A stretch of 63,159 bases of DNA, counting the filler, from Hausera hauseri (lineage: Eukaryota): NCBI GenBank assembly GCA_046269625.1. It is 11 parts of 11 records of this genome, joined end to end, with 100 filler letters (N's around TTAATTAATTAA, not from the genome) between each part and the next. Parts side by side here need not be neighbours in the genome. Positions count along the whole stretch, not along the records: positions 8,831 to 13,590 come from JBJURY010447135.1; 10 more parts are not named here. One strand, written 5' to 3'. Shown here one piece after another: positions 8,731-13,690 of this stretch; positions within the stretch are counted from its first letter, which is position 1; every line of letters starts with the position of its first letter. The notes beneath the pieces were generated by a model. The model saw nothing but the letters and a program-made list of their open reading frames with translations. It ran no database searches and was not told where the DNA came from. Both the position numbers and the translations under genes were made by a program.

Positions 8731-8891
8731 NNNNNNNNNNNNNNNNNNNNNNNNNNNNNNNNNNNNNNNNNNNNTTAATTAATTAANNNNNNNNNNNNNN
8801 NNNNNNNNNNNNNNNNNNNNNNNNNNNNNNTACCCCTGCGATAGCTGCCGCTCCAACAGCCAGGCCACACAACTCCCACCAATAGGAGTTT

Positions 8892-8965
8892 GCGGGCACT
8901 TGGCTTCTCCATTTTCGGGGTACTAAGCCCCGGGACCACGTCAAGGCGGCCGGCATCCCTGGGGG
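8892..8965 (-). ncRNA. ingi/L1Tc-type 5' signature (Pr77/79-bp hallmark), HDV-like ribozyme fold
   Basis: The minus strand reads CCCCCAGGGATGCCGGCCGCCTTGACGTGGTCCCGGGGCTTAGTACCCCGAAAATGGAGAAGCCAAGTGCCCGC. This closely resembles the T. brucei ingi 5' signature as I recall it (CCCTGGCGATGCCGGCCACCTCAACGTGGTGCCAGGGTCCAGTACCCCG...GAAGCCAAGAGCCAGC). P1, P2 and P3 pairings can be drawn. Confidence 0.8.
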
Positions 8966-11900
8966 CGTGAGGCTATTTGTATGGATCTCTGGGCAGGCGG
9001 GTGGTCGTTGAGGACAGTGTGTGTCTGTTCGGGCGAAGGGGCAGATGGGAACGTTCCGGTTTGTAAAACTGTCCCGCGCAAATAGTGAGATGTTTGTCGG
9101 ATAAATATTGTTAACCAGTCCGTTGCTTCCATTAAATTCTCGTTGGCTAATGATGTAAGTGTGTGCATTCCCAGTAACTGCGTGGTGATTTCGGACATCA
9201 CTTGGCTGTATTGCCTGCAATGAATTGTGTTTACTCCTTTAAAGGGGTCCTATGCGTGCCTGCGGCATGTTTATTATTTGCCGCCATTTCACTGGGAGAG
9301 ACAACCTCTTGTGCCAGTTGTTTGCCGTTTCATCGGTGTTTTGTCTGTGCTTTGTGTGGTGTCGTCGTTTGTCCGTGACTGTTTTCTGTTGCTTCATCTG
9401 CGAGCGGATGACATTCTTGTTTAGTATTGTTAGTAACCGGTCACATCGTGATCACATGTCGCAACTACACTGTGTCGCTATGCCCTCTTCTTTGCGTGTC
9501 AGGGCGAGATTTGTCGGAGTTGATTTGTGATGCCCAATGTGCGTCTGTCGTCTTATAGTTGGGGTCTCGCTTTTGTGTCTTAGTCGTTTCATTGCTGCTG
9601 ACGGTCGATCAGGCATCCATGCGGGCGCTGGGTATACCATTTCCCGCCCTGTAGCGGCTAATTTGTTTGTGTGTTCATTCGAGTTTACACCGCAACGTCA
9701 ATAAAGGTGTTCAAAGCGCATTAATATTTCATGTTGTTTAACGATGAGTAAGGACTGTTAGACATTACGGATCGTTCCGCAGTCTCTGTTTCAAGTACCA
9801 GAGCGTACCTGTTGCAACAGTGTTTGTTAGGCAGTATAGAGGCACAATTACGCATTTCCGCTTCCTATGAAATTTACTTCTCGCTTTGCTGCCATTTCAA
9901 GGCGACAAGGCGCCCCTAAATCAAGAATTGAACCCCGCGGAACCAGCCAGTTTGACACAGCTTTGGATAAAGTCTCGTTTGTGGGATGAGGTTTTGGCTG
10001 TGCAGGATCTTCCTCCTGATTTACAGAGCCATCAGTCCATAACGCGCCTGCAGAGCTGTCACAGGTTTTTCATTTGACGTCTTACGAGTTGTCTTTCACA
10101 CAAGCACCGCATGTGGTTGTGAAATGTCATGCTGTAGAATACATGTGCTTGAAAAATCGCGAACTACTCAGATGTTCTTTTATTATAAAGTTAAAGTCGA
10201 GGGCGCTGGGATTCAATAATGAGAAGGAAGACAGAACAGCAACGAACTTGCCTAGTGATGTGGATCAAATCGCTCCTGTGTCGTTATCCACCACTTGTCT
10301 CTGATTTGTTTGCTGTCTAAGTATTATTGCCTGCATATAAATATGTTTAGTTCTTTCAAATGATGAAAAGTAGTTTTTGCATTGAGATCTGGTAAAATGG
10401 GTTGTACACATAATCCTGTCGTTAGCCTTCAGCATCCTCCTGTGACCAAGTTTTGCAGTTGCTGTGTCGGACCTTTGCTTCTACCAGCATCGTATGCCAT
10501 AAGCAATTCGACTGCATGGCAATGTTGTAGCGAATGTGAGAGGCACCGCATTTGTTAATCTTAAAGTGCTGCCAGATATTATTGCCGAATTTTTGAATAT
10601 CTGGTTTATTCAACAGAGATCTTTTCGGAATATCTGCTGGCACCTCCGTGTACTTGTTTTGTTACTCAAAGGACCTTTTGATGTCGATTTTAATCCGCTT
10701 TATCTTCTGCACACCACAGCAAGAGTTTGTCTGTTCATTTGCACACAAGTATCGTCTAGCTTGTTTTTGCAGTGTTTATTACCATATGGTTCTCTTCTGA
10801 TCATTGTTATATAGTCTACAATCGCTGTTGTGGAGTTGCTTGCATAGTAGAGTTTGTTGTACCATAGCAGAGAATTGTCAAAGCGTCAGTAAAGGTTCCA
10901 TGAGCTAACAAAACTATTTCTTTAGATGCATACTGATGTGAGCCTATTGTGAAGAAAACGGAATACTGAAAATAACGTATACTGCGTCAGTTCTCTTGCA
11001 AAGGATTCGTTGAGAGATTACTTTTTCTGCTTGTACTTGTGCATCTAGCTCATAGTAGAATGCGACTATGTAGTTAGTGCGGTACTAAATTACTTAAATG
11101 TTCTGAAGCTTCCCAATCCCTATCATTTGATCCACGGTGTCAAACGCTTTGTTGCAAGCATCACACATCTTCTTTTGCGTGTCTTGGGCACATTTTCCCC
11201 TGTAGCTTGCGCTGCAGCTTCATGAACATATTGACCGTTGAGTAGTCGTTGTGGAATCCAGATATCTCATTATTGAGTTGTTGTTCTACGTGTTGCTTTA
11301 ACCCTGCCCATACAAGTTGTTCTAGAGTTTTACAGATATTGAGGGAGTGTGCGACTGGTTGATAAGATTTTAAGCCTATTGGCATCCGCTTGTATTTTCA
11401 CAAACGAATTGCACTGCCTCGTTATTATTGCGCTGGGATTTCACTGCGTCGGAGACTCTTACCACACATTTAGTTGAGAAGAAGATGAAATATTTATGTT
11501 ATTGTTTGGGGTTTTTTTCTGTCTTTGAGTTTGTGAGAGCGTTTGTTAATTCATCTTTTGACACAAGCACATCATTTCGATGTGTTTTGATTAATTTTTT
11601 GGCGCCAACAAATGTACATGTAAAGCGTTGGCAGAATGCTTCAGATTCGCTTGCAAGTGTTGAGTGGCATGTGCTTTTTGTGTTACCATCTTACCTTCGA
11701 CGACTAGAGCTTGCGTTTTAGTGTCACGTGGAGCATACATCGTGTTAATCATGTGTCCTCTAAACTTGTTAATTGTTACTAGTTCTTGAATGCGTGTTTG
11801 CCAACTTGCAGCATATATACTTTTCAGAGCAAGCGAGTGCTTTTGGGTATAATCCTATTATATTTCACTCCTGGCACTGGTTTCTCCAACTCGAGCTTCA

Positions 11901-13400
11901 GGGTTACCCGGTTCCTTTGGCCACCATAGCCTTACTTCTCGTATCTGTCTGTTGCACAGCTACTATTGGTTTGGCGTGCACTTCAGAACTAATTATCTGA
12001 TGCAATTGAGCACCTGCGTTGTATTTTTCCATTACCGTTTTCTTTCTCAACGGTTTACTTGAATCTTCTGTGTTTAGGAAATCCAGTTCTTGTTCCTTCA
12101 AGAAGGCAATTGTTTCCTTGGCTTCAGGTTAATATCGAGTAGGAAGGCTTCTCCTATTACTAGATGATAGAGTATGGAGTAGTTGGCACTGTCATTTGTG
12201 GAAAGTGTCGTGTAATGCTAGAGTTCATAAACCTTGTCGAAAGGGACGCCTGGGGCAAAGGGGTCTCTCAATGTTGGGTGCATCGAGGTGTATCCATTAT
12301 ATTATCAACTATTGTGAACATTTTACTACAACACCACTCCATTCTAATACCTTCATGCGTCTGATACAACAAATGGATCCTACCACCAATGGTTTACATT
12401 ACAATTTGTATCAATATGTTGCTAACCATAAGCTAGAACTTCAATAACTCTTTTGGAGTTAACTACGTTTCTTTTCGTGATCTGAATTGACGCAAACGTC
12501 GGTGGAAGATCTCCACCATAGACTGGAGCAGTGACAGTTTCGCCTTCGCCAATGACGCAAGTTCATTTCGTTTATCTAAATTCCATTGAAAGTGAAACTT
12601 GGTTTCCATTCTCTGGTTTTCAACATTTTGTAGTGTGTAACTCGTAGCACTAATGGTTGAGTCATTTTTAGAAATATTGTTCTTTTCACTGTGATTTAAT
12701 ACAGGAGACAAATGGGTACGTTTTGTAGGTACAGAATTCTCGTCCGCGTCAAACGTCTTGGGTTTCTCAGCTGCGCAAGTTTTCATTTCTTTTTCGAGAC
12801 ACTCCAGGAGTTGTGTCACTGCAGTCACAAAGATAAAGAGTAACTAGTAATCACGAATCGCTTTTGTACTGAAGTGCAACACACTCTTTCCGTTCTTGAC
12901 ATCATGTAATACGATTTCTGCTGTGACTTTGCTGTGATATCCAATAAAATCAATAATCCACACAACTCTGTCCAACGGAGGTGTGCTGATGCTTGGCTTC
13001 ACTCAGGCTTGAACACTGAGGCACGGAACTAGTAGAGGATGAGCAACTTTTGTGGGGCTGTATTTCGTGTTTTGCTGAACAACTGCGGCGGACATTGCTG
13101 GTTGCAATGAGTTCATATGGTGTTGCCATTATTCTGACTATTCACTTCTGAAGACTTGTGACTGTATCTGCTGCATTAGTGCGCACTTAGTACATTGTCT
13201 CGGGCCTATCTGTTTTTGGGTGCCGTGATAGTATTCACTGTGTGAGTATTTCCATCTGTTCTGTACATTTCTATTCGGCGTTGTTCCCTGATGCGGTGTC
13301 AGACGTCCATGTCTCCTTTTTTTTTTTTTTTCTTTATCACACTTGCTTGTGTATGAGTTATGCGTCAACTTGTTGGCTTTGTTTGGACGATTGTTCTACT
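8966..13400 (-). mobile_element. Degenerate non-LTR retrotransposon with APE, RT, RNase H and Cys-rich tail (ingi clade likely)
   Basis: APE: FQWN...KET*LT (~12450-12600). RT: KSYQPVAHSLNICKTLEQL...GF and DACNKAFDTVD (~11130-11380). RNase H: LWTDGS (~10030) and HLY*RCGVNSNE..NKLA (~9660-9720). CPF..H..CP tail at ~9000-9050. Many stops and frameshifts. Confidence 0.8.
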
Positions 13401-13690
13401 TGTGAGGTTTCGACAGTGTTCTTCTTTGAGCTACGTATTGCACGTTATATTCATTGTGTTGTGTTCCTTGATTTACACATCCTAATGTAATATGCCATGA
13501 TGCTTCGCGTGTGTTGTTATATTTCTGGTTGGTTGGATAACCCTGACTATTGTTGTTTTCTGAATGTTTGGATATTGTTTGTTTGTTGAANNNNNNNNNN
13601 NNNNNNNNNNNNNNNNNNNNNNNNNNNNNNNNNNTTAATTAATTAANNNNNNNNNNNNNNNNNNNNNNNNNNNNNNNNNNNNNNNNNNNN

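What the first reader, a model, noticed from the sequence alone, without database searches (positions are those of the whole stretch)
8892..8965. Trypanosomatid-like ingi 5' signature / HDV-like ribozyme directly 3' of an ingi-type LINE
Seen: the minus-strand 74-mer allows P1 CCCC(A)GGGA/TCCCGGGG, P2 GCCGGC/GCCCGC, P3 CGC/GTG with loop CTTGAC, and a GCCAAG J4/2-like segment. Known: the Pr77/79-bp hallmark of L1Tc, ingi, RIME and SIDER is both an internal promoter and an HDV-like ribozyme. The P1 arms differ from ingi (CCCTGGC/GCCAGGG) yet still pair. Inference: this is the head of a second ingi-family element or short derivative, inserted into or tandem with the upstream LINE. It implies either a kinetoplastid in the sample or nucleotide-level conservation (or horizontal transfer) of the hallmark outside trypanosomatids.
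Basis: partly seen in the sequence, partly recalled or inferred. Interest (0 to 1): 0.85.

Follow-up and report, generated by a model that had tools for sequence, protein, structure and literature searches.

The report
Ingi-type retroposon head with ribozyme fold
The flagged 74 bases are a real copy of the "Pr77" signature, known as both promoter and self-cleaving RNA at the start of trypanosome-type jumping genes; it sits right behind a decayed element of the same kind, so it is a new example of a known thing.

Summary
Confirmed. On the minus strand, 8964->8886 is a homologue of the 77-79-nt Pr77 hallmark of the L1Tc/ingi retroposon clade. A profile built only from seven published hallmarks finds it at E 5e-11. 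[quoted passage not shown]

All parts of the published HDV-like fold can be placed: P1, P2, P3, P1.1, P4, the GCCAAG J4/2 with the presumed catalytic C at 8903, and the CGTG promoter element at +25..+28.

P1 differs from ingi by two compensatory pair changes, and P1.1 by one.

The one public run that holds the piece shows about ten times more depth over the head than over the flank. Several variants diverge upstream of about 8956-8959. The head is therefore multi-copy, with its 5' boundary there.

This copy has two private helix-breaking changes (A5, A57), so its own activity is doubtful.

The 4.1 kb upstream on the minus strand is a decayed ingi-type LINE. It has its own degenerate head at 13057 and endonuclease, RT and RNase H motif remnants in order.

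The organism is coded. It is most likely a kinetoplastid not among the published species. This is a new member of a known kind, of modest interest.

The parts
8886..8964 (-). Pr77-like hallmark (+1 = 8964): head of an L1Tc/ingi-clade retroposon and HDV-like ribozyme candidate. P1 8964-8958/8934-8928; P2 8955-8949/8897-8891; P3 8947-8945/8937-8935; P1.1 8942/8927; P4 8920-8917/8910-8907; J4/2 GCCAAG 8904-8899.
   Evidence: nhmmer with published rows only: E 5e-11. Identity to ingi heads 74-76%. Pair counts: 83.8% of cells paired against 35-49% in slid controls.
8903..8903 (-). Presumed catalytic cytosine (position 62), first C of GCCAAG, in a C-N-R-A J4/2 context.
   Evidence: The column is invariant in alignment A2 while the next base varies C/T. 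The assignment is by analogy with HDV C75 (established knowledge, inference).
8937..8940 (-). CGTG downstream promoter element at +25..+28, overlapping L3/P3.
   Evidence: Same motif and position as in the published Pr77 alignment. Its role in L1Tc transcription is reported in PMC4748587.
8831..8885 (-). First 55 nt of the element body after the hallmark, cut by the piece's edge. Whether the element is a LINE or a short derivative is unknown.
   Evidence: Still similar to head 2 up to about +100 (GAGTTGTGTGG). One other genomic copy diverges left of 8857.
12979..13057 (-). Degenerate second hallmark (head 2), start of the upstream decayed LINE.
   Evidence: 57/105 identical to head 1 in the same ungapped register; best of 100 shuffles 48. 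The repeat finder family D1. GAAGCCAAG box 13000-12992. nhmmer E 0.12 for the box region.
8966..12978 (-). Body of a degenerate ingi/L1Tc-related element (DIRE-like), full of stops and frameshifts. Motif remnants: endonuclease FQWN 12591 and IQITK 12487; RT SYQPVA 11367, NKAFDTVD 11153, FTDALTI 10893; RNase H WTDGS 10039; possible zinc-finger remnant 9445. The 3' end is undefined (no A-run before 8965).
   Evidence: Stop-to-stop pieces and motif coordinates. The RT piece 11397-11164 hits an RVT_1 protein at E 2.7e-10 and aligns to the YRPISL...GFR..ST region. Pfam on the pieces found nothing.

Best explanation
8964->8886 (minus strand) is the 5' hallmark (Pr77 / 77-79-bp signature) of a retroposon of the L1Tc/ingi clade. 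It lies head-to-tail behind a decayed element of the same clade. In the experimentally studied relatives (L1Tc, NARTc, L1Tco, NARTco), this stretch of DNA is an internal RNA polymerase II promoter with a CGTG downstream element. As RNA, the same stretch folds into an HDV-like double pseudoknot that cuts just 5' of +1. Any transcript, including read-through from the upstream element, then yields an RNA with an exact 5' end that still carries both promoter and ribozyme. Shown here: homology, the position of the boundary, multi-copy status, and preservation of the helices through compensatory changes. Inferred: promoter and cleavage activity for the family. This particular copy has two private changes, A5 opposite C33 in P1 and A57 opposite C46 in P4. 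It is therefore probably a weakened or dead member of a family whose other copies look intact.
For: Sequence homology. An HMM of seven published hallmarks hits only here at E 5e-11. Identity is 74-76% to Tb ingi, Tcoingi and Tvingi, 64% to L1Tc/L1Tco and 58% to LiSIDER2A. L1Tco blocks hit only here, with chance 0.00 and 0.01. CGTG sits at +25..+28 as in the published alignment.

Structure. On alignment A2, 83.8% of cells pair, against 35-49% when partners are slid. Nine pairs show changes on both sides, against 2.9 +/- 1.4 in shuffles. U4-A34 becomes C4-G34, C/U7-G31 becomes G7-C31, and the P1.1 pair A23-U38 becomes G23-C38. P2 is part of the plain MFE fold.

Mobile-element context. In run X1 the summed depth is 58-108 over 8831-8989, against 5.76 in the flank. 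There are 4-6 variant contigs. Other copies diverge to the right of 8956-8959, which marks the 5' boundary. They carry G at positions 5 and 57.

Upstream element. A degenerate head lies 4093 nt upstream on the same strand, followed by endonuclease, RT and RNase H remnants in order.

Literature. L1TcRz cleaves at +1 (PMC3185411). L1Tco(78)Rz and NARTco(78)Rz are highly active (PMC4035085).
Against: No activity data exist, and no RNA run holds the stretch. Rfam's HDV-type models give nothing at E up to 10. The MFE z-score is +0.56, and a competing nested fold of -23.9 kcal/mol beats the nested part of the ribozyme fold (-9.8 to -11.7). This copy has mismatches in P1, P2 and P4, and the literature links P1 mispairs to poor activity. 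Only 134 nt of the element are visible, so its body is unknown. The structure was derived from these same sequences and from papers, and A2 has only nine rows, so the pair counts lean towards it. The published rows come from PDF text extraction.
Confidence: 0.85

Rival explanations
1. Homologous but dead relic: the hallmark is a fossil in a retroelement graveyard, and this copy neither cleaves nor promotes transcription.
For: Private A5-C33 and C46-A57 mismatches relative to other copies in the same genome. A more stable competing fold exists. It sits next to a heavily decayed element. No RNA run holds it.
Against: The catalytic core (J4/2, L3, P3, P1.1, six of seven P1 pairs) is intact. P4 is dispensable in HDV-type ribozymes (established knowledge). 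Active L1Tco has a mismatch at the same P2 position.
Confidence: 0.45
2. The sequence is not from a trypanosomatid. The hallmark sits in another euglenozoan or, by horizontal transfer or contamination, in an unrelated host assembly.
For: It is more diverged from every published Trypanosoma head (64-76%) than those are from each other (76-97%). Only one public run holds it, and that run has 1.2 Gb of contigs. The organism is coded.
Against: The hallmark has been described only in the L1Tc/ingi clade of trypanosomatids. INGI elements occur in all 57 trypanosomatid lineages surveyed and in Bodo saltans (PMC12278014). The family is multi-copy in the run at depths in line with residence. A general hallmark pattern found nothing in the metagenome contigs.
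Confidence: 0.12
3. It is the head of a short non-autonomous, possibly domesticated element (SIDER/RIME/NARTc-like) acting on a host transcript, rather than of a LINE.
For: Only 134 nt are visible. One other copy diverges after about +108 (loose end at 8857), as in families where LINE and SINE-like elements share only the head.
Against: No host gene is visible in the 4.7 kb. The neighbour is another retroelement.
Confidence: 0.3
4. Chance resemblance of a GC-rich stretch to the hallmark.
For: The MFE z-score is unremarkable and there is no Rfam match.
Against: E 5e-11 with a profile that excludes the window. Zero of 200 shuffles for the 20-nt block. Same register, strand and position relative to a LINE body as head 2.
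Confidence: 0.01

Closest known systems
79-bp hallmark of Trypanosoma brucei ingi/RIME, and the Tcoingi and Tvingi heads
   Same: 74-76% identity over 74 aligned columns. Same length class, same GATGCCGGCC...ACGTGGT...AGTACCCCG...GAAGCCAAG blocks, and CGTG at +25.
   Different: P1 arms are CCCC(A/G)GG/CCCGGGG instead of CCCTGGC/GCCAGGG. L3 is TTGACGT instead of TCAACGT, with C38 instead of T38. The P4 loop differs. It is more diverged than any pair of published Trypanosoma heads.
Pr77 / L1TcRz of Trypanosoma cruzi L1Tc and NARTc, and L1Tco/NARTco of T. congolense
   Same: Same architecture: cleavage site at +1, P1, P2 with a central mismatch, 3-bp P3, single-pair P1.1, short P4, and an AGCYAAG J4/2.
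   Different: About 64% identity. The J4/2 second base is C rather than T. Activity is shown for those elements and not for this one.
DIREs (degenerate ingi/L1Tc-related elements)
   Same: The upstream 4.1 kb is non-coding through many stops. It keeps a recognisable degenerate head and endonuclease-RT-RNase H order, as DIREs are described.
   Different: About 4.1 kb rather than about 5 kb. No poly(A) or target-site duplication could be identified. Clade assignment rests on the head and on motifs, not on a protein phylogeny.
HDV-like ribozymes at the 5' end of other non-LTR elements (R2 and others)
   Same: Nested double pseudoknot at the element's first nucleotide, releasing the element RNA from a co-transcript.
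   Different: No Rfam HDV-type model matches. P1.1 is a single pair. The same DNA also serves as a promoter in the L1Tc/ingi clade.

Membership tests
Pr77 / 77-79-bp hallmark of the L1Tc/ingi clade | Significant sequence similarity to the published hallmark consensus | tested here: met
   nhmmer profile of seven published rows: 34.8 bits, E 5e-11 at 8959->8891. Identity 58-76%.
Pr77 / 77-79-bp hallmark of the L1Tc/ingi clade | Lies at the extreme 5' end of a repeated retroposon | tested here: inconclusive
   It is multi-copy, and other copies diverge upstream of 8956-8959. That fits a 5' boundary at 8964. The element body beyond +134 is cut off by the piece's edge.
Pr77 / 77-79-bp hallmark of the L1Tc/ingi clade | CGTG downstream promoter element about +25..+28 | tested here: met
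   CGTG at positions 25-28 (8940-8937), the same column as in the published alignment.
Pr77 / 77-79-bp hallmark of the L1Tc/ingi clade | Promoter activity | not testable with these tools
   No RNA run holds the stretch. A reporter assay is needed.
HDV-like self-cleaving ribozyme (L1TcRz type) | P1, P2, P3, P1.1 and P4 in nested double-pseudoknot order, with cleavage 5' of P1 | tested here: met
   All five can be placed. For this copy: P1 6/7, P2 6/7, P3 3/3 (one G-U), P1.1 1/1, P4 3/4. Across A2, 83.8% of cells pair against 35-49% in slid controls.
HDV-like self-cleaving ribozyme (L1TcRz type) | Covariation supporting the helices | tested here: met
   Nine pairs changed on both sides, against 2.9 +/- 1.4 in shuffles (0/500 reach it). 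Pairs 4-34, 7-31 and 23-38 involve this lineage. The sample is small and the structure was partly derived from these sequences.
HDV-like self-cleaving ribozyme (L1TcRz type) | Catalytic C in J4/2 (C-N-R-A) | tested here: met
   C62-C63-A64-A65 (8903-8900). The column is invariant in A2.
HDV-like self-cleaving ribozyme (L1TcRz type) | Self-cleavage | not testable with these tools
   Needs in vitro transcription.
HDV-like self-cleaving ribozyme (L1TcRz type) | Match to a curated HDV-type covariance model | tested here: not met
   No Rfam match at E up to 10. To my knowledge Rfam has no L1Tc-type model, so this weighs little.
ingi/L1Tc-clade LINE or DIRE (upstream 4.1 kb) | Hallmark at the 5' end | tested here: met
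   Head 2 at 13057: 57/105 identical to head 1 in register, against a maximum of 48 in shuffles. It is only weakly seen by the published-row profile (E 0.12).
ingi/L1Tc-clade LINE or DIRE (upstream 4.1 kb) | Endonuclease, RT and RNase H domains in that order | tested here: inconclusive
   The RT fingers region is significant (E 2.7e-10 to an RVT_1 protein). The endonuclease and RNase H rest on short motifs read by eye. Pfam found nothing on the fragments.
ingi/L1Tc-clade LINE or DIRE (upstream 4.1 kb) | Poly(A) tail and target-site duplication | tested here: not met
   There is no A-run on the minus strand before 8965 and no flanking direct repeat. The element is either truncated by the insertion of element 1 or decayed.

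The most novel reading that the evidence does not exclude
The contig is not from a trypanosomatid but from a more distant euglenozoan, or from an unrelated host after horizontal transfer. The Pr77 promoter/ribozyme head would then be older or more mobile than the family Trypanosomatidae. Its three compensatory pair changes would show that the ribozyme fold, not just the promoter sequence, has been under selection over that distance.
Probability: 0.12. Interest if true: 0.65.

Novelty: new member of a known kind. Interest (0 to 1): 0.3.

Why it matters
The dual promoter/ribozyme head of the L1Tc/ingi clade is well described, so this is mainly a confirmation. Its modest value is comparative. This lineage changed both P1 arms and the P1.1 pair in a compensatory way while keeping L3, J4/2 and the CGTG element. 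That is natural-variation evidence that the RNA fold is under selection alongside the promoter. The head-to-tail arrangement also illustrates the proposed job of the ribozyme, which is to cut an element's RNA free from read-through transcripts of an upstream copy. If the host proved to lie outside Trypanosomatidae, the age or mobility of the hallmark would need revising.

Tried and rejected
- **Rfam:** release 15 at E up to 10 gave no HDV-type hit, only three chance hits.
- **Plain MFE folding:** z-score +0.56, which is uninformative for a pseudoknot.
- **Pfam on DIRE fragments:** 20 DIRE fragment queries in two calls (19 distinct pieces, one repeated) gave nothing relevant.
- **PDB sequence search with the RT piece:** nothing.
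- **The search for homologous proteins with the RT piece:** no shared words.
- **Exhaustive HMMER search:** one hit only, an Artemia protein made of repeated RT N-terminal parts. It confirms RT but says nothing about taxon.
- **ESM Atlas:** arthropod 'hypothetical' clusters, one with RVT_1; a weak lead only.
- **tblastn of the Artemia RT unit on the piece:** only the fingers region is significant.
- **Metagenome scan with a general hallmark pattern:** zero loci.
- **Full-text search for six k-mers of the head:** zero papers. They are also absent from the supplements of PMC4035085 and PMC12278014.
- **Third GAAGCCAAG at 12117-12125:** 22/96 identity outside the box, so chance.
- **tRNA scan:** none.
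- A covariance model built from published rows only was therefore not made. An HMM of the seven published rows already in A2 was used instead.

Full report
**What is there**

These are CCCC(A)GGGA facing TCCCGGGG, GCCGGC facing GCCCGC, CGC/GTG around CTTGAC, and GCCAAG.

**Is it the hallmark?**

Published Pr77 consensus rows were available as text:
- The supplement of PMC4748587 gives L1Tc, L1Tco, ingi, Tcoingi, Tvingi, RIME, SIDERs and DIREs.
- The supplement of PMC4035085 gives individual copies.

Two blocks taken from the T. congolense L1Tco head (20 and 17 nt, up to 3 mismatches) match the window only at 8935-8954 and 8892-8908 on the minus strand. Chance expectation was 0.00 and 0.01.

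Alignment A2 holds head 1, head 2 and seven published rows. [quoted passage not shown] It is about 64% identical to L1Tc/L1Tco and 58% to a Leishmania SIDER2A signature.

An HMM built from the seven published rows alone, with the window excluded, finds 8959->8891 at 34.8 bits, E 5e-11. Homology is therefore established.

By homology, +1 is 8964 and the hallmark ends near 8886. The CGTG downstream promoter element sits at +25..+28 (8940-8937), exactly as in the published alignment.

**The fold**

Positions are numbered from 8964 = 1.

| Element | Positions | State in this copy |
|---|---|---|
| P1 | 1-7 / 31-37 | 6 of 7 paired; A5 opposite C33 |
| P2 | 10-16 / 68-74 | 6 of 7 paired; C13 opposite C71 |
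| P3 | 18-20 / 28-30 | G-U, C-G, C-G |
| L3 | 21-27 | UUGACGU |
| P1.1 | G23-C38 | paired |
| P4 | 45-48 / 55-58 | 3 of 4 paired; C46 opposite A57 |
| J4/2 | G61 C62 C63 A64 A65 G66 | intact |

The P2 mismatch is at the same position where active L1Tco has C opposite A. C62 (8903) is the invariant cytosine in a C-N-R-A context. It is the presumed catalytic base by analogy with HDV C75; this is an inference.

The 23-38 pairing is what HDV geometry predicts: the nucleotide after P1 pairs with the third loop base. It also fits the statement that L1TcRz has a single-pair P1.1 that a G at -1 can disrupt. Here -1 is C.

On A2, 83.8% of cells form standard pairs, against 35-49% when the 3' partners are slid by 1-3 columns. 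Nine pairs change on both sides, against 2.9 +/- 1.4 in shuffles, and 0 of 500 shuffles reach that number. Three of these changes involve this lineage:
- U4-A34 becomes C4-G34.
- C/U7-G31 becomes G7-C31.
- A23-U38 becomes G23-C38.

Caveats on the fold:
- A2 has only nine rows, one of them decayed.
- The structure was taken from these sequences and from the literature.
- P4 of L1Tc/L1Tco is not in register in the MAFFT alignment.
- Plain MFE folding is uninformative (z +0.56). It does contain P2 but prefers a competing nested helix.
- Rfam has no match.

**Copies elsewhere in the genome**

One public run (coded X1, organism coded) holds 65% of the piece's words. Its contigs were laid at 80% or more likeness.

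- They give a summed depth of 58-108 over 8831-8989, against 5.76 in the unique flank. Four to six variant contigs are involved.
- Several contigs stop matching to the right of 8956-8959 and continue with unrelated sequence. That is the behaviour expected at the 5' boundary of a repeated element.
- The loose ends show sister copies with G at position 5, which restores the P1 pair.
- All sister contigs have G at position 57 and read CCCC-GACCA-GGGG, a perfect P4.
- All have C at position 40.

The family therefore looks structurally intact. The window's copy carries two private helix-breaking transitions.

One contig also diverges left of 8857. Copies may therefore share only about the first 108 nt, as LINE and SINE-like partners do in this clade.

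The tool warns that summed depth is not a copy number, so 'about ten-fold' is only indicative.

**Upstream neighbour**

A second, degenerate head starts at 13057, on the same strand and 4093 nt upstream.
- It shares 57 of 105 ungapped positions with head 1. The best of 100 shuffled queries reached 48.
- It contains the GAAGCCAAG box and the GAGTTGTGTGG that follows the hallmark in head 1.

Downstream of head 2, the minus strand has no long ORF. It does carry, in order and with plausible spacing, these motif remnants:

| Domain | Motif | Window coordinate |
|---|---|---|
| Endonuclease | FQWN | 12591 |
| Endonuclease | IQITK | 12487 |
| RT | SYQPVA | 11367 |
| RT | NKAFDTVD | 11153 |
| RT | FTDALTI | 10893 |
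| RNase H | WTDGS | 10039 |
| Zinc finger (possible) | CDRLL | 9445 |

The RT fingers piece (11397-11164) is the only part with statistical support.
- An exhaustive HMMER search gives one hit at E 2.7e-10. The hit is an Artemia protein made of six RVT_1 units.
- The piece aligns to the YRPISL...GFR..ST region of that protein.
- The E-value is inflated by the repeated units; single units score about 30 bits.

Pfam sees nothing in the fragments.

This matches the description of DIREs: long, non-coding through stops, still headed by the hallmark. No A-run precedes 8965 and no target-site duplication was found. Whether element 1 inserted into the 3' part of the decayed element or lies in tandem with it is therefore open.

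**Mechanism**

For L1Tc, NARTc, L1Tco and NARTco, the same 77-78 nt act as an internal pol II promoter that depends on the CGTG element (PMC4748587). They also act as an HDV-like ribozyme that cleaves co-transcriptionally at +1 (PMC3185411; PMC4035085).

The authors propose that this keeps tandem copies individual and frees element RNA from polycistronic transcripts. The arrangement seen here, a head directly behind another element on the same strand, is the situation in which that function would matter.

For this locus these functions are inferred, not shown. I put about 0.35 on measurable cleavage by this exact copy, and higher for the sister copies.

**Whose genome?**

This is not resolved.
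- The head is further from each published Trypanosoma head (64-76%) than those are from one another (76-97%).
- It is not T. brucei, T. congolense, T. vivax or T. cruzi.
- INGI elements are reported in all 57 trypanosomatid lineages surveyed and in Bodo saltans (PMC12278014).
- A little-sequenced kinetoplastid is therefore the simplest reading.
- A general hallmark pattern found nothing in the metagenome contigs, and k-mers of the head occur in no searchable paper.

**Limits**

The seven published rows already in A2 were used instead, and they come from PDF text.

**Verdict**

This is a new member of a known kind, with informative compensatory changes. Interest is modest unless the host proves to lie outside Trypanosomatidae.

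Noticed in passing
window 13317-13335 (+), and 13336-13590: A run of 19 T with one interruption, which is poly(A) on the minus strand. It lies about 260 nt minus-strand upstream of head 2 and is preceded on that strand by A/C-rich sequence. It could be the tail of a third retroposon in the same orientation, or a polypyrimidine tract for the plus strand.
   Followed up: partly
window 12117-12125 (-): A third exact GAAGCCAAG on the same strand, inside the decayed element. The surrounding 96 positions are only 23% identical to head 1 in register, so it is taken as chance despite the low expectation (0.02 per window).
   Followed up: yes
window 8857 and leftwards: In run X1 one contig shares the head but diverges after about +108. 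This hints at two element types sharing only the first 100 nt or so, like L1Tc/NARTc.
   Followed up: no
window 12072-12126 (+): A hairpin (AGGAAA...TTCTTGTTCCTTCAAGAA...TTTCCT) gives a sub-threshold Rfam hit to a plastid psbA 3'UTR model (22.6 bits, gathering score 55.8). This is judged to be chance.
   Followed up: no
window 8831-9330 versus the rest: GC is 52% around the head and falls to 38-42% in the decayed element. The plus strand is T-rich throughout (AT skew -0.1 to -0.45), which fits an A-rich LINE sense strand on the minus strand.
   Followed up: no
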